Below, piece after piece: positions 12,225 through 61,320 of a stretch of DNA of 63,065 nt. The stretch spans positions 52,681,136-52,744,200 of the forward strand of contig NC_068984.1 in assembly GCF_001194135.2 (NCBI RefSeq), written 5' to 3'. The stretch comes from Octopus bimaculoides (Eukaryota). The translations under genes were made by a program, and so were the position numbers. Within the stretch, counting starts at the first letter, position 1. Each line of letters starts with the position of its first letter. The notes under the pieces were generated by a model. The model made no database searches. It saw only the letters and a program-made list of their open reading frames with translations, and was not told where the DNA came from.

Positions 12225-12645
12225 CTACGGGAGGCACAAGGCCTAAAATTTTGTTGGCGGTGGGCGGAGCCTGATTTGTGTGCTCCACTGAACCTTATTC
12301 TATCAACCCTGGAAAGGATGGAAGATCAAGTTGATCAGCGGAATTTGTACTCAGAACGTAAAGACGGACAAAATACCGTTAAGCATTTTGCCCGGCGTGC
12401 TAACGATTCTTATTTCTTTACTACCCACAAGGGGCTACACACAGATGGGACAAACAACGACAGACAAACGGATTAAGTCGATTATATCGACCCCAGTGCG
12501 TAACTGGTACTTATTTAATCGACCCCGAAAGGATGAAAAGCAAAGTCGACCTCGGCGGAATTTGAACTCAGAACGTAGCGGCAGACGAAATACCACAAAG
12601 CATTTCGCCCGGCGTGCTAACGATTCTGCCAGCTCGTCGCCTTCG
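12225..12645 (-). mobile_element. SINE family B dimer (Tx1-tailed monomer fused to a second monomer)
   Basis: Minus-strand junction ..GCCCCTTGTGGGTAGTAAAGAAAT|AAGAATCGTTAGCACGCC.. Confidence 0.85.
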
Positions 12646-14819: not shown

Positions 14820-15797
14820 CATAGACCTGATTGGCGCGACATTAAAAAAATAGGAAGCAGCGACAGGAACAAAAATTAACGCGGAAAACCAGTGGGCTTG
14901 CGGAAAATCAGTGGGCTTGCAACTCGGTACCTGGAGAGGCAAGTCCATGCCATCCAACAGCGTCGTGGGGTACTGGACAGATAGTCCGGTTAAATTGCTC
15001 GGGATCTGGTTCGGTCCGGACCTCTAGGTGGAGAAAATCTGGGACGAGGTGACGAACAGGATGGCTAATCTCACCCAGAAATGGGCGGAGAAGAAGCTAT
15101 CTCTGAAAGGACGAGCTGAGGTGGCGAATGCGTACATCGCATCTGTCATCAACTACCGCTTGGCCGTTGCCTCTTGCCCCATATGCCGGCTGAACAAGCT
15201 GGTGCGCTTACTCTTCCGCTTTCAGTGGAAGGGACGCGTTCCGCTGGTCAGGCGTTCCATCTGCTGTCAACAGCCGCTGAATGGGGGGATGATGGGTATA
15301 CCGTGGTTGCTGATGCGCAGACATGCGCTCAAGCTGCGACATCTACAGCGTTTCCTTGACGATGAGTAGGTGTGGTCGCCGTTTATTAGACTCGCTCTCC
15401 CACAGCTCGTTTCTTTGAGCTACAATCATGGATTAGGCACAGACCGAGGAGGGGCGCTTGGCTCCTCGAGTGCGGTCAAGCGCTCACAGCCCTTTGCCAG
15501 TCGGGCAATGCGGTCGGTGGTAGTTCCACTCTAGCATTCTATAGAGGGTTAGTGGAGGGAAAGTGGGACGAGGTTCTCTGGGAATCTCTTGGCATCGACG
15601 AGGATCAACTTACTGGTCTGTTCCCGAGGACTTTTGGGTCGAGGCCTTTAGATAACTTCCAGAAATCCCTGGCCTGGCAGTGCTACCGTCGGGTGCTGCC
15701 CATTCGGGATAAACTTTACAAGCACGGAAGTGCCGTCAGCCGAGCCTGCCCGAGGTGCGCTCAGAGCAACGAAACCGTTCTGCATGCACTCGTCCAG
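14820..15797 (+). pseudogene. L1/Tx1-clade LINE ORF2 fragment (end of RT to C-terminal CCHC), 3' end lost in gap
   Basis: GTKINAEK, KLLGIWFG, LSLKGRAEVANAYIASVINYRL, PLNGG.MGIP, LDNFQKSLAWQCYR, CPRCAQSNETVLHALVQ. Contains stops and a 19-bp tandem duplication at 14881-14918. Confidence 0.9.
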
Positions 15798-16431
15798 NNN
15801 NNNNNNNNNNNNNNNNNNNNNNNNNNNNNNNNNNNNNNNNNNNNNNNNNNNNNNNNNNNNNNNNNNNNNNNNNNNNNNNNNNNNNNNNNNNNNNNNNNNN
15901 NNNNNNNNNNNNNNNNNNNNNNNNNNNNNNNNNNNNNNNNNNNNNNNNNNNNNNNNNNNNNNNNNNNNNNNNNNNNNNNNNNNNNNNNNNNNNNNNNNNN
16001 NNNNNNNNNNNNNNNNNNNNNNNNNNNNNNNNNNNNNNNNNNNNNNNNNNNNNNNNNNNNNNNNNNNNNNNNNNNNNNNNNNNNNNNNNNNNNNNNNNNN
16101 NNNNNNNNNNNNNNNNNNNNNNNNNNNNNNNNNNNNNNNNNNNNNNNNNNNNNNNNNNNNNNNNNNNNNNNNNNNNNNNNNNNNNNNNNNNNNNNNNNNN
16201 NNNNNNNNNNNNNNNNNNNNNNNNNNNNNNNNNNNNNNNNNNNNNNNNNNNNNNNNNNNNNNNNNNNNNNNNNNNNNNNNNNNNNNNNNNNNNNNNNNNN
16301 NNNNNNNNNNNNNNNNNNNNNNNNNNNNNNNNNNNNNNNNNNNNNNNNNNNNNNNNNNNNNNNNNNNNNNNNNNNNNNNNNNNNNNNNNNNNNNNNNNNN
16401 NNNNNNNNNNNNNNNNNNNNNNNNNNNNNNN

Positions 16432-38481: not shown

Positions 38482-38905
38482 CAGGCGGCAAGCTGGCGGA
38501 ATCGTTAGCACGCAGGGCGAAATGCTACCCGGTATTTCGTCTGCCGTTACGTTCTGAGTTCAAATTCCGCTGAGGTCGACTTTGCCTTTCATCCTTTCGG
38601 GTCGATAAATAAAGTACCAGTTACGCATTGGGATCGATGTAATCGACTTTATCCCTTTGTTTGTCCCCTCTATGTTTAGCCCCTTGTGGGCAATAAAGAA
38701 ATAAGAAACGTTAGCACGCCGGGCGAAATGCTTAGCGGTATTTTGTCTGTCTTTACGTTCAGAGTTCAAATTCTGCCATGGTCGACTTTGCCTTTCATCT
38801 CTTCGGGGTCGATAAATTAAGTACCAGTTGCGTACTGGTGTTGATCTAATCGAATGGCCTCCTCCCCATAAATTTCGGGCCTTGTGCCTATAGTTGAAAA
38901 GAATA
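38482..38905 (+). mobile_element. SINE family B dimer (Tx1-tailed monomer plus second monomer)
   Basis: Junction GCCCCTTGTGGGCAATAAAGAAAT|AAGAAACGTTAGCACGCC at ~38679-38720. Confidence 0.9.
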
Positions 38906-43145: not shown

Positions 43146-44562
43146 CTGGCAGAAAGGGAATAGAGTTGAATAATAAAGTTTTATAATTACAACTGTTTTC
43201 TCTTTTAGAATTGCATCCTATAATTGAAATTTTACTATAGATACGTTCCAAGTTTTAATCAACACCTTCCAATCCTTCCAGTCGGGAGAAAATACAGCTT
43301 GTGATCGCAGAGAAATCATGTATTTTTGTGTTTCTGTGGTTACGTTCGATATCATTTTATCACATTTTACAATCAAACACGTAAATACGTAAAAAAAAAA
43401 CATGTTGACCATCTTCACCACCTGTTAACAGGTCAATATAAATGTTTATTACCCAACACCACCTAAAAATACTTGAGTAGTGCGTGTTTACTACGAGCTT
43501 ATGTCTCAGTGTTTCTAATGTGGGACATGCACCCCACCCTTGTGACGTGGGACTCCAGAATAGAGTGTAAGTAAGAGGTGATAACACCTGCAATAAAGTT
43601 GTAATTGGAACATTTTTGAATACACTCACACACACACAAATGTACGCGCACGTGTGTGTGTGTAAAACAAGGAAGAAGATAAGACGTCAGTATAACATAA
43701 GTGTGTAAAATAGAATTAAACTAGGTGTCAAAAAAAAAACTGGTTGTTGTTGAGTATATCAATATTATCATTGTAGTAGACTTCTGCTGAAGGGTTTATT
43801 TCATCTTGATTAGGTCGTTACCCGGCGGCGTAGCGACGATATACGACTAGTATCGATTATGATTAAGGTAGAAGAATTATCGATTATGATTCAATTAGTA
43901 GAAGAAGGCGAGGGTTAAGAGAGAGGTGCTATCCTCCAGTAAATTTGTTGAAAGATGGTGGAATGTGGAAAGGATAATAATTTTAGAAAATCGAAGTTGG
44001 AGCTCGGGGGGGAAAAAAGATCGAGAAACACTGCTCTTTCGACATACTAGAAATAGAATCCAAATCTCCTTCAAATCACACCCTACAATCTTTACAAAAA
44101 GGACACATTGAACAATGTAACACTTGATGTACAAAATGACGAGATACCATGACTGGAACGCTTTGATCATAAGTACTACAACTACTTAAATCAGTGGTTC
44201 TCTTCTCTTTGCAGCACGGCACCTTCTTTCACTGGATGGCGTTTGAAAAATGTATTTACTCGCGTTTTACAAAAAGAGAAAATTTTTTTTCAAATAGAAG
44301 TTAATTTTGCTCACAGATTAATTATCCGTGTCCTTATATTCTCCTATCCTACATGCACCACCTTTTACGTATTTGAGTGGACTATTGTCCACTACTTCAA
44401 TTTGAATGTTTATGGAAATTACTAACGAAGACAAGGATTTATATTAAGAAATTAATAAATCACCAGTCATGACTCTGATCACCAAAGAAAATATTTTGAA
44501 AACGTGTTTAAAATATAAACAGTGTACCTGGTTTAAATATTTCAAAGACAAATCACAATTAC

Positions 44563-45229
44563 GGATCTAGTTTAAAACGGGGGCACCAGTTTTCATTAAT
44601 GTTTTATGTAGTGTTTTTGGTACCGAAAGACTTTCAAACTTCGTATACTTATCTATTTTGTGTTATAGAACAGAAAAAAATTTTTGTATTCGAATTTATT
44701 TCATATAAAAAATTGTCTTATTTCGATAATTTCTACTAATCACTGACGTCTATTCAGTTGAAAACAGTTAGCGCTGTAACGGTGTATATCGTATTAATCC
44801 CCTAACCCTAACCCTAACTAGACTGTTAACCCTAACCCTAACCCTAACCCTAAAACTAACCCTAACTCTAGAATCCGAACTCTAAAATTGTTACACACAT
44901 AGATACGCACAGCGTAATTTATTATATAAACAATATATGCGTATAAATTACGATTAAACCGGATGAAATATGTCACAGGGAATAACATTTTTATGACCGC
45001 CCAGCAGTAACTATATTCAGCTGAATAGACGTCAGTGATTGGTTGAAATTACAGAAATACGACAACTTTAACATGGAATAACTTGCGAATTCCTTTTTTT
45101 TTTTTTTGTTAAGAAGACTAAGAGTAAAAGATGTTTTATATGACACATTCTACCAGTGTCCCAAGTTTCAAAGTGTTTCGTTAGTGTTTCGTTAAGAAAA
45201 TACTGGTGCCCCCGTTTTAAACTAGATCC
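44563..45229. mobile_element. Non-autonomous DNA transposon with GG-terminal TIRs and 8-bp TSD (Merlin-like), carrying telomere-like repeats
   Basis: 28-bp perfect TIR GGATCTAGTTTAAAACGGGGGCACCAGT; TSD ACAATTAC at 44555-44562 and 45230-45237; inner inverted repeat AATCACTGACGTCTATTCAG; (TAACCC)n at ~44800-44868. Confidence 0.88.
44800..44868. repeat. Interstitial (TAACCC)n telomere-like repeat inside the MITE
   Basis: Direct reading. Confidence 0.9.
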
Positions 45230-46539
45230 ACAATTACTGAAAACACCCAGTGTCCCCATATCACCCTTGACATTGCCCCTTCAGAGCTCACAAAGCACCG
45301 AAGGGTGCATTAAGTTTAAAAATCAGTGACCTAAATGATAATCTGCTCTACATAAATACCACTTTTATTTAACATCACGATCACTAAAAACACCCAGCAT
45401 TGCCCCTGGTGAGCAAACAAAGCACCCAGTTTATGAACCAATGACCTAAAAGGTAATCTATTTTACATAAATACCTCTTACATTTAACATCAATCAGATG
45501 ATAACTTTACAATTTACAGAATGTCTGGTATCGCATTACACAGGCAGGTCTCGCTAGAATATTTATTGTCTGTCATAGGATCAGGTTACACTCATATCTG
45601 TGTTTCACTAATGAAGACGTAGAGAACCACGTGTATCAAATCGTACAAGTAATAGCCTGCTGCTTGTGCCTGCTGTAGGGAGCTTCTGAGGCAGTGAAAG
45701 AAGCATCACTTGACTGGATATCTATTCACACAAACCATACGTAAACCTTGATGTATGGGATGACGAATACTAGTGTCCATAGTAACAAGAACTTGAAATC
45801 TAGTACTTTTCTACTGAATATCTGTATACTTTCTTATAATTTTCAAAAAGAACTGAATCCTAGGTATTTTACTGCAAATCTGCTGAGAAGCGGAGTAATT
45901 AGACTGGGTGTTGTATATGCCATTTACGAGAACATTGCGCTAATATGTAATGGAACTTATTTCAACAAGTAATCGAAAGCTAGTCAACAGACTTCGATTC
46001 TTTGAGTGTTTTGCTCGTACTTGTACGCTATTTAAACTTTGCTGGTTCATGGGCTAACTCTGCGTGGTTGCTAGGTCTGCTAGAAATTGCAGCCACAGTT
46101 ACCTCAAATTACACATTGGATGCCAAAGTAAATGCGTGTAATATACTGGACTGGGAAATGGTTAGTCCTAAAAACACAATGCTCGAGTAAAGGATCGAAT
46201 GGTCATTGTTGGAACGTCTTCAATCTTAGATCTGCACAATCATGACTGAATGGGACTAAACAGCAACATAATACAGGACTCGCCCGCGTTACAGGAGCCA
46301 TACGTTCCTAAAAATTTTGTCATAACGGAAATCTTGCAATGTGCAATTACTTTTCCCACTGGTTGTCATATTATAAATTGAGAATGCATTTCGCCAGAGA
46401 AAAAAACGAGCATCGCAACCGCTTTTATGAATGAAAATTATAATTTCTAAGCAGACACAGTACAATATGGATACATAAAAACATTTGAAGAGAAATACAT
46501 TAAGGAATCGATAAGAATCGTAATAGTGCAATTGGGCAA

Positions 46540-46889: not shown

Positions 46890-48064
46890 GATGCAGCATT
46901 CCTTTGCATTTTTTTTTATGTGGAGGGGTTCGAAACTGCTGGTGAAACGCTCTATTTGCTGCAAAGAACCGTTAAAGGGTGGACTGGGGGTGCCTTGGAT
47001 GTTGATGCGCACTGAGGTTGAGGCATCTGTGGTTCCACCTGGATGGTGAACGGGTGTGGTCTCCGGTTGCGAAACAGATGTTTCCCAAGTTCACTAGTTT
47101 CGGTGGACGGGAAACCTGGTTCTATCGTAGATCGAAGTTGTGTACATGGTTTACGGAGTGCCGTAAGGCTCTCCTGCTATTCCGTTGCTCGAGTAATGCC
47201 AGCGGTAGTGATTCAACCGCATCTTTCTATAGAGGGTTGGTAGAGTCGGAATGTGACGATACCTTAGGGGAAACCATAGGTCTCGATGATAATCAGCTGG
47301 CCAGTCTGTTACAACGTACATTCAGGCCGAAGACCCTGGATAACTTTCAGAAGTCTCTGGCTTGGCAGTGTTACCGAGAAGCTTGCCCATTCGAGATGAG
47401 CCCACAAGACACGGTTGCCACGGCCCATCGACCATCCAATATGCGAGCAGGATAGGGAAACCGTCCTGCATGCTATTGTTCAGTGCTCGGAGGTGTCGGA
47501 TGTATGGGCTTATGCTGAACAACTATTGTCGAGTACAAGAAGAGTACAGATGTCATCTGAGTCAATTCTAAAAATTGACCCACCTGTTTCCTTATCGAAA
47601 GAAGGTAAGAATTGTTTTCTCGTAGTAGTAGCAATTGCGAAAGAGGTGACATGGAAGACTTGAGTGAAAGGACTGAAGGCAGGTAGCTTCATCTCTGGCC
47701 CTTTACTGTTGAATTTTTTTCACTTTTCACCTGAAGAGAAAAATAAGGCTAGAGAGAAGATGCCTGTCGGCGAAAATGTTCGCTGGTCGATGGAGGAATG
47801 TAACACGGATGTTGCGAATGAATGTAACCACATGAATACGATCAAGGACTTAACCCAGGTATCAGTGGCGAAACGGGTCTTGCGGGGTCCAAGCTGAACC
47901 CGTCTCCCTACCCCATTTGTATTGTCTTATGTTGTTGTCCTATCATCCGATTTTATACTTATTGTAATTTTTAAACGCATTTTATATGTTGCTCTCATTT
48001 GTGTGTCTGACCCCAAATCAGATTGTATTGTCTCCTCTATGCTGGCCCCTTGTGGGCAATAAAA
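46890..48064 (+). mobile_element. 5'-truncated L1/Tx1-clade LINE: ORF2 C-terminus plus complete 3'UTR
   Basis: KRSICCKEPLKGGLGVP, LDNFQKSLAWQCYR, PICEQDRETVLHAIVQC (CCHC-type remnant); related to 14820-15797. The 3'UTR ends CTCCTCTATGCTGGCCCCTTGTGGGCAATAAAAAAT. Confidence 0.9.
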
Positions 48065-48089
48065 AATCAATTAGCTCATTTTTCTCTCC

Positions 48090-53669: not shown

Positions 53670-53722
53670 AGGAGGAGACCTGACAGAAACGTTAGCATGC
53701 CGGTCGAATTGCTTCGCGGTAT
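53670..53722 (+). mobile_element. SINE family B head, 5' part of the copy split by E2 and E3
   Basis: GGAGGAGACCTGACAGAAACGTTAGCATGCCGGTCGAATTGCTTCGCGGTAT; resumes at 57644. Confidence 0.85.
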
Positions 53723-55341
53723 AACGGCTCTGTGAATTATTGTGAACACTGTTGTGTTATTTTGTGAAGGCTGTCTCGGTTAATAGTTGTGGTTTTTGTG
53801 GAATTATTACGGTTGCATTTCACGTGAGCTGCTGCATTTTCCCCAGCTATGGCAAGTGGTAGTGTCTCCAGTATGGAGAGCTACGCCAAAGCCACTGCGG
53901 TGAGGAGTCAGTGCCGCTAGAAACCAAGTTAATCAAGTTGGATATGGAGGAGGTGACCAGAAGCAGGAATTTGATAGAAGTTGAGGGAGACTCATACAAA
54001 TTGTGTCCCCCAAAAGAGACAAAAGAAAATTCTGAGGACAGTAGTGTATCGTACACAGGCTGTCGAAACCGGTAAAATTGAAATGGTGACGGAAGAGGGA
54101 ATCGAGGAGTGCCTGGGTGAAATTGTCATTGAAGCCACGTACATCAACAGAGGAAGAAAGTTCGGTACGGTAGAGGTGAGGTTCGCCACTATAGAAGAGG
54201 CAACCAAGCATGCGACCAACCTCTTAAGAAGTGAAAAAATAGCATTGCTACCAAGTTATAGAGGAAGAAGAAGTATGAAAATACGTATTCCCAGAGTTAC
54301 ACCATATATTAAACCAGAGTGGTTGGTTGCAACAGTGCTGGCTGCAACCAAGGAGGAGCCGGAATTGGGACCAGTGGTGAAATCAAAAGTGCACAAATGG
54401 TGGGGATTTGGACTAGAAATGTGGCTTTTTGCCACATTGGAGGACATAGAAAGAATTCTCTACCAGATAGAAGTGGAGGATGAGAGAACATTAAATGTTG
54501 TAGTCGAGGGAAGGAAACCAAATTGTTACATATGCAGGGAAAGAGGTCATATGAAGACCCAAATGCCCCTTATAGGAGTTGCCACAGCAAGAGAAAGCAC
54601 AAACAGAGGAGGAAAGAATTGTAGACCACACTGAGGAAATAAAAGAGAAAGAAGTGTGAAACAGAGAAAACAAAGGAGAAGAACGAAAATGGAGCTACTA
54701 ACCCTAAAAAGCGAAGGAAAAATAAGTCAAAGGAACGGTCAACAGAAAACAAAACAGAGATGAAAAAGCCAGAAACTAATAATGTACAAGAAGAGGGGGG
54801 GAGAGAACGGATAAAGATGTGAAATACAAGGGGGTTTTGATAAAGTACGAGAATTGCGAGCAGATGGAGAGTAGGGTCGAGAGATTGGGAGAAGTAATAA
54901 GAGTGAAAATGCCAGAGAAATGTGCTGAAAGATGCATTTTGATACCTGAGGAAGGCTGCTGGGATCGCGTAGAAGAACTTGGTGAAATTATAATGACGAA
55001 ACGGATATGGTTGGTGGAGACCCCCCCTAGACTGATTATTTGCAGTTGTTATGGACGGACGTAACAATGATTAATGGAAGAAAAGTAACGCGAGTGTTTG
55101 AATTTTTTGAGTTACAAAACCGTTAAAATGTTTACATGATGTTGAACGTAAAAGTGAAAAACTGGATAAATGTAACCACCCGACTTTGGCGATCGAGTGG
55201 ACATTGCGCCTCATTTTTTTTCATTCTTGCATATTATTTTATTTTAATTACCCCGATTTTATGTTGGCGTTTTGTACTGTCTTTATGTTTTGTGATGTCT
55301 TAAACATTCTTTGTATAACCCTTTATGGGTAATAAAGAAAT
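53723..55341 (+). mobile_element. Full-length ORF1-only (HAL1-like) retroposon E2
   Basis: 5'UTR, MASGSVSSMESYAKATA start, putative RRM-like region, CCHC knuckle, K/E-rich linker, C-terminal segment, hairpin plus T-rich 3'UTR, tail ACCC-TTTAT-GGGT-AATAAAGAAAT. No gap and no APE/RT motif. Confidence 0.88.
53981..54634 (+). pseudogene. ORF1p-like protein of E2 (putative RRM-like region plus CX2CX4HX4C knuckle), frameshifted
   Basis: TYINRGRKFGTVEVRF..LLPSYRGRR..VEGRKPNCYICRERGHMKT; the last Cys is recovered by removing one base (ACC-C-AAA-TGC). Confidence 0.8.
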
Positions 55342-55619
55342 CGGTAGTCCGTCACTGTGGAGTTATTGCTTGAGTTTATGCTGAAATATTTATCGAATTG
55401 TTATTTGCCATTGTTATTTGATTTGAATTGTTGTTAGAACTGTTGCCATTGTTAATTTGTTAATTGGGGGGGGGGTCCCATTGTGGGAAACTGGAGAAGA
55501 TGCAGGAGGGAGGTCTAAGTTATGCGGCTGCAACGAGCAGAAGAGTAGACGGTGCAAGAGTTGGAGGTCCGCGAGATAAAGGTGGAGCCTAGAAGGAAGA
55601 AGGAGAGTGAAAAATTAAT

Positions 55620-56154
55620 GGATCTATTTTAAAACGGGGGCCACATTTTTCATTAATGTTTTACGTAGTGTTTTTTGTACGGAAAGACTTTCAAACTTCG
55701 TATACTTATCTATTTTGTGTTATANNNNNNNNNNNNNNNNNNNNNNNNNNNNNNNNNNNNNNNNNNNNNNNNNNNNNNNNNNNNNNNNNNNNNNNNNNNN
55801 NNNNNNNNNNNNNNNNNNNNNNNNNNNNNNNNNNNNNNNNNNNNNNNNNNNNNNNNNNNNNNNNNNNNNNNNNNNNNNNNNNNNNNNNNNNNNNNNNNNN
55901 NNNNNNNTAGGGTTAATTGTTTCAGAATCGTTTGTTTATGTAGTCGGCACTTAATGTATATCGGCTGAATGAACGTCAGTGATTGGTTGAAATTACAGAA
56001 ATACAACTTTAACATGGAATAACTTATGGATTTCTTTTTTTTTTTTAAAGAAGACTAAGAGAAAAAGATGTTTTATATGACACATTCTACCAGTGTTCCA
56101 AGTTTCAAAGTGTTTCGTTAATGAAAAATGTGGCCCCCGTTTTAAAAAAGATCC
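55620..56154. mobile_element. Second copy of the Merlin-like GGATC-TIR MITE
   Basis: TIR GGATCT(A/T)TTTTAAAACGGGGGCCACATTTTTCATTAA; TSD AAATTAAT at 55612-55619 and 56155-56162; TAGGGTTAA at the right edge of the internal gap. Confidence 0.88.
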
Positions 56155-56245
56155 AAATTAATCACTAAGGAAGGTAATATTCTGAAGCTAACGCCACCTG
56201 AAGAATTATCGGCCAACGTGTTAAAAAGAACGGTAACTTAAAACC

Positions 56246-56848
56246 ATGAAGACAGCCACAAGAAAAATAGAGATTGCGCCTCTAGAAGCCATAGAGGAGT
56301 GTATCAAGGAGTTGAAAAGATTTACAACATACATTACGAGAGGGAGAAAATACGCCACTGTGGAGGTGCGCTTCACAACAGAGGAGGAAGCAATAAAGCA
56401 TTCCACAGAGGCTATAAGGTCAGAAGAATGGATGCTCCTGCCTTCGTACTGCGGCAAACGTGTGACCAAAGTGCGAGTGGGTAGGGTGCTACTCGAATTA
56501 AAGGCAGAATGGCAGATGACAGCAATAACATATAATATGAAGGATGGGAAGATTTTGAAGGCTACCAGGACCCAGAAAGTAAACTACTGGGGATATGGTA
56601 TTGAATTGACAGTACAGGCAACTACGGAGGATTTAAACTGTGTGGTGGATGAGATTGTGTTGCCAGAAGATGTAAGATTGAGAGTTAGTGTAGAGGGGAG
56701 GCCACCAATATGTTTCACATATGGAGAGATGGGCCACATGAAGGCGTGGTGCGCCCAAAGAGAACAACAAGCAGAACAGGTGGAGAGACAAGAGAGTGTG
56801 GACCAGGTCATTGGTAACAGAAAAAGAAAATGGATTTACTATGGTTAA
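56246..56848 (+). pseudogene. ORF1p-like protein of E3 (putative RRM-like region plus degenerate CCHC knuckle)
   Basis: TYITRGRKYATVEVRF..LLPSYCGKR..VEGRPPICFTYGEMGHMKAWC (second Cys replaced by Tyr). Continues by frameshifts into 56796-57116 and 57123-57395. Confidence 0.8.
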
Positions 56849-57643
56849 AAAGAAAAGGGGGAGGGGCGGAGGAATGAGTTCTCCGCCAGAGAAGCAGAAA
56901 AAGAAGAGAGAAGAGGTGAGAAAAGAAACTGTGATGGAGGTCAGTAAGAAGAAAGTGGAGTTACCAGTAAAGATAGCGGTTGTTCCAGTGGAGAAAGATT
57001 TGGAAATACAACTGCAGGAAGGAGAGTTGGAGAGATTATTTAGGTTAGAGGAAGGAAAAAGAGAACAAAAAGTACAAGATAAAGGAAAGAAGATACGAGG
57101 AGGAGATGGAGTGTAGCATTATGTGACATACCCAAAGAATGTTGAAACAGAAAAAAAGATAAATAAGTTTCATTCAATAGTAAGAGTAAAGGTACCTTCA
57201 TATGTCTACGCAGAGGATATGAAGGCAATACTGATGGAAGAAGAGAATTACAGAAAGTTGAAAGAGATGTGTGGAGATAGCGTTGACCCACCAGGAGTGG
57301 ATGTAGAATTCAAGGAGTTGCCTCCAGTAGTGAATCTGAGAGATTTTGAACCACTGAGAAGTTCTACTAAAAGAGGAAAAAATAATGTATGTTAAATGAT
57401 GTTATTTTTAGGAAAATAATGGTGATAAAGTAGGGAAAAAAGAACAATTGTAGATAGTACATATAATGGTTCAAATGGTACCGCATGGGAGTGGGGCCCG
57501 TGTGGCCATTTTCATTTTTTTTTTCATTATTATATAATCTCATCCCATTTACATTCGTTTTATGTTTTTTGTCTCCACTGTGGTCTTGTCTGTTCTTACG
57601 GTGTCCGCATCTCTGTTTAAGGCTTTATGCCTTATAAGGAAAT

Positions 57644-57805
57644 CAGTATTTCGTCCGTCTTTACATTCCGAGTTCGTATTCCACCAAGGTCGACTTTGCC
57701 TTTCATCCTTTCGGGGTCGATAAAATAAGTAGTACCAGTTGAGCGCTGGAATCGATGTAATTGATTTACTCTCCTACCTCGGAAATGCTAAAATTTGAAA
57801 CTAAC
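57644..57805 (+). mobile_element. SINE family B, 3' remainder of the copy split at 53722
   Basis: CAGTATTTCGTCCGTCTTTACATTCCGAGTTC..GGTCGACTTTGCCTTTCATCC..AAATTTGAAAC. Confidence 0.88.
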
Positions 57806-60934: not shown

Positions 60935-61320
60935 TAACTCTTGTTTCAGTCATTGGACTGCGCCCACGCTGGGTCAACGGCTGGAAGGGTTTAGTCGAAC
61001 AAATCAACCTCAGTACTTATTTAAGTCTGGTACTTTATTCTGTCGGTGTCTTTTACCGAAGCGTTAAGTTACGAAGACGTAAGCCAACTAACACCAATTG
61101 TCAGGCGGGTGATGGGGAGACAAACACGTACACAAACGCATTTATAGATATACGAGAGGTTTCTTTCAGTTTCCCTCTGCCAAATACACTCATAAGGCTC
61201 TGGTCGGTCGAGCTATAGTAGAAGACATTTGCCCAAGGTGTCACGCAGTGGAATTGAATCCAAAATGATGTGGTTGGGAAGCAAACGTTTTTACTTCATA
61301 GCCATGCCTGCACCTATAAT
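60935..61320 (-). mobile_element. SINE family A, full length (further fragments at 60400-60570 minus, 61485-61625 plus, 62045-62245 plus)
   Basis: Reverse complement of the family A tail, body and head. Confidence 0.85.

What the first reader, a model, noticed from the sequence alone, without database searches (positions are those of the whole stretch)
53717..57655. Two RT-less elements inserted sequentially at the same nucleotide of one SINE head
Seen: SINE B head ..GCTTCG-CGGTAT [E2] CGGTAGTCCGTC [E3] CAGTATTTCGTC-CGTCTTTAC.. The intact head reads GCTTAG-CGGTATTTCGTC. Both elements' 3' ends (..GAAAT) join the target at the identical base, while the duplicated lengths differ (6 and 12 bp). 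Established: a fixed first-strand nick with variable second-strand cleavage and head-to-tail tandems is typical of sequence-specific APE retrotransposons (R1, Tx1 clade). Inference: E3 inserted first and E2 then hit the regenerated target, so the helper endonuclease appears to target the A/B-box spacer of a highly abundant SINE. That would be a retroelement system using another retroposon as its safe-harbour target.
Basis: partly seen in the sequence, partly recalled or inferred. Interest (0 to 1): 0.85.

Follow-up and report, generated by a model that had tools for sequence, protein, structure and literature searches.

The report
Two ORF1-only retroposons stacked in SINE
In an octopus genome, two diverged reverse-transcriptase-less LINE derivatives sit head-to-tail inside one SINE copy, and this looks more like the second landing on the first one's tail than like an enzyme that targets that SINE.

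Summary
A tRNA-like SINE ("SINE-B", octopus) is split at GCTTAG|CGGTAT. It reads CGGTAT-[E2, 1619 bp]-CGGTAGTCCGTC-[E3, 1747 bp plus a nested MITE]-CAGTATTTCGTC-rest of SINE. The N gap lies inside the MITE and does not touch the junctions.

E2 and E3 are full-length, ORF1-only (HAL1-like) non-autonomous LINE derivatives, 39% identical in ORF1. Their 3' ends (a hairpin with compensatory changes, then AATAAAGAAAT) are shared with a SINE-B subfamily and with an L1/Tx1-type LINE.

The "site-specific safe harbour" inference is not supported:
- Ten other SINE-B heads in the window are intact at that site.
- Three LINE copies, E1, L003 and a SINE-B monomer have unrelated 3' flanks.
- Two other E-type tandems (L001, L004) contain no SINE.

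Best reading (about 0.45): E2 inserted first. E3 then integrated at E2's tail (nick AATAAA|GAAAT, 5-nt microhomology). This gives a 17-bp target duplication that copies the tail/SINE junction, so "the same base" is a duplicated junction rather than a second independent nick.

A genuine endonuclease preference for this site remains possible (about 0.25). The case is ordinary to mildly interesting: a new member of known kinds.

The parts
53673..53722 (+). 5' part of the host tRNA-like SINE-B copy (head up to the break). The last 6 nt, CGGTAT (53717-53722), are the left copy of E2's target duplication.
   Evidence: Aligns to SINE-B heads at 38704-38733 and 6726-6753. Compared with full copies. 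Sequence checked.
53723..55341 (+). E2: full-length ORF1-only (HAL1-like) non-autonomous LINE derivative, 1619 bp. It has a 5' UTR, a decayed ORF1 (several stops and frameshifts), a K/E-rich region, a C-terminal domain and a LINE-type 3' UTR.
   Evidence: Three-frame translation. No RT anywhere in it. 39% ORF1 identity to E3. Tail match by nhmmer, E=2e-7.
53981..54634 (+). Longest remnant of E2's ORF1 (217 aa): RRM-like core (GRKFGTVEVRFATIEEA...LLPSY) plus a CCHC knuckle with its last Cys lost.
   Evidence: Pfam zf-CCHC is weak, E=0.033. Alignment A1.
55317..55341 (+). E2 3' tail: hairpin ACCC-TTTAT-GGGT followed by AATAAAGAAAT. This is the proposed landing site of E3 (nick AATAAA|GAAAT).
   Evidence: 4-pair hairpin, 3 pairs with compensatory changes across 9 tails.
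55342..55353 (+). Spacer CGGTAGTCCGTC. Its first 6 nt are the right copy of E2's 6-bp TSD. The whole 12 nt (plus GAAAT under the tail-landing model) is the left copy of E3's TSD.
   Evidence: 10 of 12 identical to the SINE-B consensus CGGTATTTCGTC. Chance 3.8e-5.
55354..57643 (+). E3: second full-length ORF1-only element of a different subfamily, 1747 bp once the nested MITE and its TSD are removed. Relatives in Octopus bimaculoides are about 70% identical.
   Evidence: Tail match by nhmmer, E=1e-8.
55620..56154 (.). Nested TIR element (MITE) carrying the assembly gap 55725-55907. It has an 8-bp TSD AAATTAAT (55612-55619 and 56155-56162) and TIRs GGATCT.TTTTAAAACGGGGGCCACATTTTTCATTAA.
   Evidence: Inverted match 55619-55656 / 56155-56118 at 97%. 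Second copy at 44557-45230 is collinear on both sides of the gap. Sequence checked.
56246..56848 (+). E3 ORF1, 200 aa, open: RRM-like core plus a CCHC-like knuckle.
   Evidence: Homologs P0001 and P0002 are O. bimaculoides uncharacterized proteins (E 1e-36 and 9e-34).
57619..57643 (+). E3 3' tail: hairpin AAGGC-TTTAT-GCCTT followed by ATAAGGAAAT.
57644..57801 (+). Rest of the host SINE-B copy. The first 12 nt, CAGTATTTCGTC (57644-57655), are the right copy of E3's TSD.
   Evidence: Aligns to SINE-B consensus positions 46-174.
3639..5266 (-). E0: a third ORF1-only element (contains gap 4136-4545). It is inserted in the head of a different tRNA-like SINE (SINE-A), with a 15-bp TSD AAGAAGCTT(G/A)CTTCC and 5-nt tail/target microhomology (AAGAA).
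   Evidence: ORF1 is 36% identical to E3. Weak tail match.
2703..3017 (+). E1: 5'-truncated E-type copy with the same tail. TSD GTTGGTGTT. Not in a SINE.
46900..48066 (+). 5'-truncated copy of the presumed partner LINE: ORF2 C-terminus with the zf-RVT region, a 3' UTR, hairpin GCCC-CTTGT-GGGC and AATAAAAAAT. Its 3' flank is caattagctc, not a SINE. The 5' limit is approximate.
   Evidence: Relatives carry RVT_1 + zf-RVT. Closest solved RT is human L1 ORF2p.

Best explanation
The locus is a three-step pile-up of mobile elements in one SINE copy.

1. A tRNA-like SINE-B copy was hit by E2, an ORF1-only (HAL1-like) derivative of an L1/Tx1-type LINE. E2 was mobilised in trans through the family's 3' hairpin plus AATAAAGAAAT tail. 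The first-strand nick was at TTAG|CGGTAT and the TSD was 6 bp.

2. A diverged relative, E3, then integrated at E2's own tail.
- The first-strand nick fell inside the A-rich tail (AATAAA|GAAAT).
- The freed GAAAT-complementary 3' end primed on the GAAAU end of E3 RNA.
- The second-strand nick fell 12 bp into the SINE.
- The resulting 17-bp target duplication (GAAAT + CGGTATTTCGTC) copies E2's tail/SINE junction to the right of E3. Both elements therefore appear to join the SINE at the same base although only E2 was nicked there.

3. A MITE with an 8-bp TSD later inserted into E3.

Shown:
- the anatomy and the nested duplications;
- the shared tail;
- that the elements are RT-less;
- recurrent E-type tandems without any SINE;
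- microhomology at other junctions.

Inferred: the order (E2 before E3) and the position of E3's first nick inside E2's tail.
For: 1. No general specificity for the site.
- Ten other SINE-B heads are intact.
- The 3' flanks of three LINE copies, E1, the L003 copy and SB49 are unrelated to SINE-B.

2. Head-to-tail E tandems recur without a SINE.
- L001 (O. bimaculoides CM046615.1): copy A's tail AATAAAGAAA abuts copy B's 5' end with a spacer of 0-5 nt.
- L004: a tail is followed after about 15 A-rich nt by the next copy.
- So 3 of the 5 loci holding E-type elements (the window, L001, L003, L004, L005) contain a tandem.

3. Tail-like microhomology at first-nick sites in this family.
- E0: target AAGAAGCTT against tail ..AATAAAGAA.
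- SINE-B dimers..GAAAT-AAGAAtcg on target GGCAGAATCG.
- The SINE at 5956: TSD AAAAYAAGTACTA after tail ..GAAAAGAAT.

4. The model reproduces E3's end exactly: TATAAG (from RNA) + GAAAT (primer) = TATAAGGAAAT. A 17-bp TSD fits the family range (9, 13 and 15 bp).

5. With many equivalent free SINE-B heads, two independent hits on one copy are improbable. A tail-attracted second hit is not.

6. E2's coding region is more decayed than E3's, which is weakly consistent with E2 being older.
Against: - The duplicated GAAAT cannot be told apart from each element's own tail, because both tails end in GAAAT anyway. The extension of the TSD into E2's tail is therefore not demonstrable at this locus.
- E2's own insertion and several others (E1, LINE48, L008) show no microhomology, so tail-like priming is not obligatory.
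- Tx1 elements are known to make exactly this "two copies sandwiching a TSD" pattern by repeated site-specific nicking.
- The sample is small: 13 junctions, 5 E-bearing loci, several different species or contigs.
- No empty or half-filled orthologous site was available.
- The L001 and L004 tandems could instead come from template switching.
Confidence: 0.45

Rival explanations
1. The partner LINE's endonuclease has a real sequence preference for GCTTAG|CGGTAT in the SINE-B head (a Tx1-like target preference rather than strict specificity). E2 and E3 result from two independent first-strand nicks at the same bond, with second-strand nicks 6 and 12 bp away. The second event used the target regenerated by the first.
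For: - The exact same 3' junction base appears for two elements only 39% identical in ORF1.
- There is no tail/target microhomology at CGGTAT, as expected if the enzyme rather than annealing chooses the site.
- Precedent: tandem SINEU-3 copies sandwiching a TSD, and graded preferences (13-90%) for Mariner-N4_AMi among Tx1-Mar partners (PMC4494074).
- The RT is L1/Tx1-like, with zf-RVT.
- Within the window, 5 of 8 tail-family junctions lie in tRNA-like SINEs that cover only 7.3% of it.
Against: - No second SINE-B copy is occupied at this site: 10 intact heads.
- None of the 3 LINE copies, and no other E or SB-L copy, is at the site.
- The other SINE hits are at different positions of the tRNA-like head: about position 12 in SINE-B, and the D-arm region in SINE-A.
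- The enrichment vanishes once the ascertained locus and non-independent events are removed and the outside loci are added (2 of 10, P=0.16).
- It does not explain why the same copy was hit twice among very many free targets.
- It does not explain the SINE-less tandems in L001 and L004.
Confidence: 0.25
2. A single-event or secondary origin. Possibilities are: E2-spacer-E3 arose elsewhere and moved as one composite unit; unequal recombination or gene conversion joined two SINE-B copies that each carried one element; or the RT switched templates from the 5' end of E3 RNA to E2 RNA during one TPRT event.
For: - Zero-spacer tandems such as L001 A->B are what end-to-end template jumps produce.
- SINE-B copies are dense and clustered, for example 7 copies in 5438-6911, which gives substrates for recombination.
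Against: - The 12-nt spacer is target sequence (10 of 12 to consensus), and the outer flanks form one continuous SINE-B. A template jump would not create that.
- The composite-unit and recombination versions still need earlier insertions at the same SINE-B site, so they only move the problem.
- No second copy of E2 or E3 DNA exists in the window.
Confidence: 0.1
3. Assembly artefact: E2 and E3 were joined wrongly in a gap-rich draft assembly.
For: The window has 11 gaps, one of them inside E3.
Against: - The junctions lie in unique, gap-free sequence at least 370 bp from the gap.
- E2 and E3 share no DNA similarity that could mislead an assembler.
- The nested TSD logic closes perfectly.
- The gap is bracketed by the two halves of one MITE.
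Confidence: 0.03

Closest known systems
HAL1 (half-L1) elements of mammals: ORF1-only non-autonomous LINE-1 derivatives
   Same: 5' UTR, ORF1 and a LINE-type 3' end with no ORF2/RT. Copies are TSD-flanked or 5'-truncated, and mobilisation in trans by a related autonomous LINE is presumed.
   Different: These are octopus elements. ORF1 is of the RRM + CCHC type with an extra K/E-rich region and C-terminal domain. Recognition is through a conserved 3' hairpin plus AATAAAGAAAT (stringent type) rather than poly(A). Homology of their ORF1 to the partner LINE's ORF1 could not be checked.
Tx1-clade target-preferring LINEs and their passengers (Tx1L in Tx1D; Tx1-Mar with SINEU-3 in Mariner-N4_AMi; PMC4494074)
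   Same: An APE-type L1/Tx1-like LINE family with non-autonomous passengers. A transposable element serves as host, and two copies in tandem sandwich a target duplication.
   Different: In those systems most copies (up to 90%) sit at the same site in many independent target copies. Here only one SINE-B copy is occupied, and the LINE copies seen are elsewhere. Clade membership is untested.
Insertion of L1-mobilised elements into the A-rich tails of earlier insertions (Alu/L1 tail-to-head arrays; established knowledge, not tested here)
   Same: The second element lands on the first one's tail. The TSD includes tail sequence plus adjacent flank, giving head-to-tail pairs that are independent of the surrounding sequence.
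   Different: The tail here is a short fixed AATAAAGAAAT after a hairpin, not poly(A). Whether the endonuclease likes this motif is inferred only from a few junctions.
R1/R2-type rDNA-specific elements forming tandems at a regenerated target
   Different: No evidence here for a fixed nick site across independent targets. The targets are not limiting.

Membership tests
Sequence-specific (target-specific) APE-type LINE system, Tx1/R1-like | Independent copies of the target carry insertions at the same nucleotide | tested here: not met
   10 other SINE-B heads in the window (3 or fewer mismatches) are uninterrupted at GCTTAG|CGGTAT. No other E, LINE or SB-L 3' end in the window or in L001-L008 abuts CGGTAT. 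The sample is small.
Sequence-specific (target-specific) APE-type LINE system, Tx1/R1-like | One kind of sequence flanks a large share of copies (more than 20% in Kojima 2015, PMC4494074) | tested here: inconclusive
   4 of 13 tail-family 3' junctions touch SINE-B, but at two different positions. Two are in the same copy and two may be one dimer family. 0 of 3 LINE copies do. After removing ascertainment and non-independence the count is 2 of 10, against 7.3% SINE coverage (P=0.16).
Sequence-specific (target-specific) APE-type LINE system, Tx1/R1-like | Tandem copies sandwiching a target duplication | tested here: met
   E2 - CGGTAGTCCGTC - E3. However, the L001 and L004 tandems sandwich no recognisable target.
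Sequence-specific (target-specific) APE-type LINE system, Tx1/R1-like | RT groups within the Tx1 clade; APE endonuclease with demonstrated specificity | not testable with these tools
   Only an ORF2 C-terminus (zf-RVT) is in the window. Relatives have RVT_1 + zf-RVT and are closest to human L1 ORF2p among solved structures. No reference clade set and no APE sequence were available.
HAL1-like ORF1-only non-autonomous LINE derivatives | ORF1 homolog present, ORF2/RT absent, in full-length copies | tested here: met
   E2, E3 and E0 have an RRM-like + CCHC ORF and no RT in any frame. E2 and E3 have defined, alignable 5' ends (CTGTG.A.TTATTG).
HAL1-like ORF1-only non-autonomous LINE derivatives | 3' end shared with an autonomous LINE | tested here: met
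   The hairpin + AATAAAGAAAT is shared with LINE 3' ends in the window (48027-48066) and in L006. 3 of the 4 hairpin pairs show compensatory changes.
HAL1-like ORF1-only non-autonomous LINE derivatives | TPRT hallmarks: TSDs and 5'-truncated copies | tested here: met
   TSDs of 6, 12, 15 and 9 bp (E2, E3, E0, E1). The 5'-truncated copies are E1 and L001-A.
HAL1-like ORF1-only non-autonomous LINE derivatives | ORF1 derived from the partner LINE's ORF1 | not tested
   No full-length partner LINE was obtained.
tRNA-derived SINE (host element SINE-B) | tRNA-like head with A and B boxes, LINE-derived tail, many dispersed copies | tested here: inconclusive
   About 17 copies cover 5.6% of the window. 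One subfamily carries the LINE tail. A-box-like (TGGCAGAATCG) and B-box-like (GAGTTCAAATTCC) motifs were seen by eye only. ARAGORN calls no tRNA.
Tail-directed tandem insertion (as for L1-driven insertion into A-rich tails) | TSD of the downstream element includes part of the upstream element's tail | tested here: inconclusive
   GAAAT precedes both copies of the 12-mer, but both tails would end in GAAAT anyway.
Tail-directed tandem insertion (as for L1-driven insertion into A-rich tails) | Tandems recur whatever the surrounding sequence | tested here: met
   E-type tail-to-head pairs occur in L001 (no SINE, 0-5 nt spacer) and L004 (A-rich spacer). Three SINE-B tail-to-head junctions are in the window.

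The most novel reading that the evidence does not exclude
The octopus L1/Tx1-like LINE family with the hairpin + AATAAAGAAAT tail, together with its ORF1-only and SINE passengers, has a genuine preference for the heads of tRNA-derived SINEs. The supporting cases are E2 and E3 at the anticodon-stem/variable-arm boundary of SINE-B, E0 in the D-arm region of SINE-A, and SINE-B tails joined to SINE-B heads at positions 12-14 three times. It would then be a retroposon system that uses other, highly abundant Pol III retroposons as landing pads.
Probability: 0.2. Interest if true: 0.6.

Novelty: new member of a known kind. Interest (0 to 1): 0.3.

Why it matters
If the endonuclease really preferred SINE heads, this would add a retroposon-in-retroposon case to the list of Tx1-type "safe harbour" strategies. 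It would also offer hundreds of thousands of natural targets for studying APE specificity.

On the more likely reading the value is descriptive. Octopus genomes hold a three-tier retroposon guild sharing one 3' recognition hairpin with clear covariation:
- an L1/Tx1-like LINE;
- HAL1-like ORF1-only elements of several diverged subfamilies;
- a tRNA-like SINE subfamily.

Its members tend to stack head-to-tail. That is useful for repeat annotation of cephalopod genomes. It is also a caution: identical junction bases in stacked retroposons can be a duplicated junction rather than evidence of site specificity.

Tried and rejected
- Self-BLAST of E2 and E3 against the window found no further DNA copies. 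Only the nested MITE has a second copy.
- Pfam on the ORFs gave only weak zf-CCHC and RRM_3 hits. A PDB sequence search with the ORF1 profile gave only retroviral zinc-knuckle noise.
They returned few octopus proteins, and most (UniRef or metaclust only) have no contig. Only one chromosome-level locus (L001) could be fetched.
P0016 was not on record. L005, L007, L014 and L015 carried no usable 3' junction (L015 was not read).
- A metagenome scan for the SINE core gave one contig holding a different SINE. A viral-contig scan gave none.
- tRNA-structure-specific targeting was considered and rejected. The three SINE-head insertion positions (about 12, 20 and 44 in tRNA numbering, judged by eye) are not equivalent.
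- I considered whether L001-B's first bases (ACGTTGAGCGGCAG) are a diverged SINE-B target. This was rejected because the same motif starts the 5' UTR of L003 and aligns with E3's 5' end, so it is internal to the element.
- Relative dating of E2 and E3 from TSD divergence (1 of 6 against 3 of 12) is uninformative.

Full report
**What the window is.** The sequence is eukaryotic and repeat-rich, about 36% G+C, with 11 assembly gaps. The ORF1-like proteins of the finding have their best relatives among uncharacterized proteins of Octopus bimaculoides (about 70% identity). One relative maps to chromosome CM046615.1 of GCA_001194135.2. The window is therefore octopus DNA.

**Observation.**
- A tRNA-like SINE ("SINE-B") has about 17 copies covering 5.6% of the window. 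One copy is broken after ...GCTTCG.
- Then follow: CGGTAT (53717-53722); E2 (53723-55341); CGGTAGTCCGTC (55342-55353); E3 (55354-57643); CAGTATTTCGTC (57644-57655); and the remainder of the SINE to about 57801.
- Ten uninterrupted heads in the window read GCTTAGCGGTATTTCGTC with 3 or fewer mismatches, against 0.03 expected by chance.
- The spacer matches the SINE 12-mer at 10 of 12 positions. The chance of that at a fixed place is 3.8e-5.
- The nested 6-bp and 12-bp duplications are real, and both elements end in GAAAT directly before the same SINE base.

**The gap.** The gap at 55725-55907 lies inside a nested TIR element (55620-56154).
- The element has an 8-bp target duplication AAATTAAT.
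- Both sides of the gap are collinear with a second copy of the element at 44557-45230.
- Removing the element restores the E3 reading ESEKLITKE found in relative P0003.
- The gap is irrelevant to the junctions.

**What E2 and E3 are.** Each has a 5' UTR with an alignable start (CTGTG.A.TTATTG). Each also has an ORF with an RRM-like core and a CCHC knuckle, a K/E-rich stretch, a small C-terminal domain and a 3' UTR of about 250 nt. There is no reverse transcriptase in any frame.
- They are only 39% identical in ORF1 and share no DNA similarity detectable by BLASTN. They are separate subfamilies, not a duplication.
- A third member, E0, lies on the minus strand at 3639-5266. A 5'-truncated member, E1, lies at 2703-3017.
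- They are ORF1-only, HAL1-like non-autonomous LINE derivatives.

**The shared tail.** The last 45 nt or so of E1, E2, E3 and L001-A are homologous. The same holds for three SINE-B "long-tail" copies (ending at 38702, 12412 on the minus strand, and 49565) and for LINE 3' ends in the window (48027-48066) and in L006.
- The tail is a 4-bp hairpin followed by AATAAAGAAAT.
- Three of the four hairpin pairs show compensatory changes: GCCC/GGGC, ACCC/GGGT, AGGC/GCCT, GGC/GCC.
- The LINE carries a zf-RVT ORF2 C-terminus. Its relatives carry RVT_1 + zf-RVT. The closest solved RT is human L1 ORF2p, E=1.5e-21, against 2e-12 for R2.
- So one L1/Tx1-type LINE family, the E elements and a SINE-B subfamily form one mobilisation guild. 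Tx1-clade membership could not be tested.

**Is the guild specific for the SINE-B site?** I collected every 3' junction available.

| Element | Where | What follows the 3' end |
|---|---|---|
| E2 | window 55341 | cggtag, the SINE-B head site |
| E3 | window 57643 | cagtat, the same site in the same SINE copy |
| SB38 | window 38702 | aagaaAcgttagc, a SINE-B head from about position 12 |
| SB12 | window 12412 (-) | aagaaTcgttagc, the same structure |
| SB49 | window 49565 | AT-rich unique DNA |
| LINE48 | window 48066 | caattagctc |
| E1 | window 3017 | aagg + GTGTTGGTGTT |
| E0 | window 3639 (-) | AAGAAGCTT..., the head of a different SINE (SINE-A) |
| L001-A | L001 9738 | the 5' end of another E copy |
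| first E copy | L004 about 1366 | A-rich spacer, then another E copy |
| LINE | L006 | C(ATT)n |
| LINE | L008 | caacacac |
| E-type copy | L003 | lies in AT-rich DNA; its 3' junction was not pinned down |

- Only E2 and E3 are at CGGTAT, and they are in the same SINE copy.
- Within the window, tail-family junctions look enriched in tRNA-like SINEs: 5 of 8, against 7.3% coverage.
- After dropping the locus that prompted the finding, counting the two identical dimers once and adding the five outside loci, the count is 2 of 10 (P=0.16).

Tandem SINEU-3 copies sandwich a TSD in Mariner-N4_AMi, driven by Tx1-Mar (PMC4494074). Three observations argue for a different cause here.
- Equivalent free targets are plentiful. 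With head occupancy of 2-10%, any doubly hit head among 17 has a probability of 0.003-0.07. A double hit with no singly hit heads is rarer still.
- E-type elements form head-to-tail pairs without any SINE. L001 A->B has a 0-5 nt spacer. The motif at B's start is element-internal, because it recurs at the L003 5' end and aligns to E3's 5' end. L004 is a second such pair. SINE-B tails are also joined to SINE-B heads three times in the window.
- Several first-nick sites in this family begin with tail-like sequence. Examples are E0 (AAGAA shared between tail and target), the dimers (AGAAT) and the SINE at 5956 (TSD AAAAYAAGTACTA after ..GAAAAGAAT). This suggests priming by annealing of the RNA's 3' end.

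An existing AATAAAGAAAT tail is the best such site.
- If E2 came first and E3's first nick fell at AATAAA|GAAAT, the primer anneals to the GAAAU end of E3 RNA.
- The second nick, 12 bp into the SINE, then gives a 17-bp TSD. The family range is 9-15 bp.
- The product is exactly what is seen, including E3's end TATAAG+GAAAT.
- On this reading the identical junction is simply the duplicated E2/SINE junction.
- E2's coding region is also more decayed than E3's, which is weakly in line with E2 being older.

**Limits.**
- Both tails end in GAAAT anyway, so the extension of the TSD into the tail cannot be proven at this locus.
- The structure itself does not reveal the order of insertion.
- The sample is small and mixed.
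- No genome-wide tally and no orthologous empty or half-filled site could be obtained with the tools.
- I therefore give the tail-landing model about 0.45, a genuine endonuclease preference for the site about 0.25, composite-unit, recombination or template-switch origins about 0.1, and an assembly artefact about 0.03.

**Comparison with known systems.**
- The elements are new members of the HAL1-like class: ORF1-only, with a LINE 3' end, TSDs and 5' truncation.
- The stacking resembles L1-driven insertion into earlier tails.
- It resembles target-specific Tx1/R1 systems only in showing one tandem with a sandwiched TSD. The defining feature, the same site occupied in independent target copies, was tested in this small sample and not met.
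- Retroelements that use another transposon as their target are in any case already known for Tx1 (Tx1D, Mariner-N4_AMi, Harbinger and LTR elements).

**Verdict.** The novelty is "new member of a known kind", and interest is about 0.3. The most novel reading that remains open is a real preference of this guild for tRNA-SINE heads (probability about 0.2).

Noticed in passing
window 3624-5281 (minus strand): E0, a third ORF1-only element (contains gap 4136-4545), is inserted in the head of a different tRNA-like SINE (SINE-A; other copies at 825-1000, 25285-25440 and 61159-61316). It has a 15-bp TSD AAGAAGCTT(G/A)CTTCC and a 5-nt overlap between its tail (..GGAATAAAGAA) and the target.
   Followed up: partly
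window 38487-38902; 12225-12636 (minus); 6164-6420: A SINE-B tail is joined three times directly to a SINE-B head that starts at consensus position 12-14 (..AAAGAAAT-AAGAA[A/T]CGTTAGC twice, and ..CTTTGAAAC-GTAAGCACGCC once). These could be a dimeric subfamily, a hotspot at GGC|AGAATCG with in-register 5' joining, or tail-landing of 5'-truncated copies. Not resolved.
   Followed up: partly
window 5438-6911: A cluster of seven SINE-B copies lies within 1.5 kb, nested or separated only by (ATT)n/(ATC)n runs. One copy (5956-6163) sits inside another with a 13-bp TSD AAAAYAAGTACTA. A LINE tail in L006 is likewise followed by C(ATT)n.
   Followed up: partly
window 55620-56154 and 44557-45230: A MITE family with about 38-bp TIRs (GGATCT.TTTTAAAACGGGGGCCACATTTTTCATTAA) and an 8-bp TSD, which suggests a hAT-like origin. 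No transposase was seen.
   Followed up: partly
L001 8470-10410 (O. bimaculoides CM046615.1); L004 1-2335 (Logan SRR11869394): Two further head-to-tail pairs of E-type elements with no SINE between them. The annotated gene LOC128249544 (P0002) is an ORF1 remnant of one of them, spliced to unrelated downstream sequence.
   Followed up: partly
L002 6400-6613 (JGI metagenome contig Ga0066187_1002493): A SINE with a different tRNA-like head carries the same central block as SINE-B (GGTCGACTTTGCCTTTCATCCTTTCG.GGTCGATAAA). This block is therefore a conserved SINE core domain shared across families or taxa. Which named superfamily it belongs to was not determined.
   Followed up: no
window 61-290: A long near-perfect palindrome of two arms of about 100 nt (ctatatttattactggtgaaggccgatttatagtgttacccc... 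and its reverse complement), followed by (CA)n and (TACA)n repeats. Possibly a foldback or MITE-like element.
   Followed up: no
window 28560-29072 (minus); 14900-15797 (+): Two further LINE remnants. One is a 170-aa RT C-terminal fragment of a different LINE family (no Pfam hit). The other is a second copy of the zf-RVT LINE, cut by gap 15798-16431.
   Followed up: no
P0016: A 466-aa relative of the octopus LINE ORF2 is deposited at NCBI as a protein of a "Herbaspirillum sp." MAG. Several others come from metagenome assemblies. This is most likely animal DNA binned into microbial assemblies.
   Followed up: no
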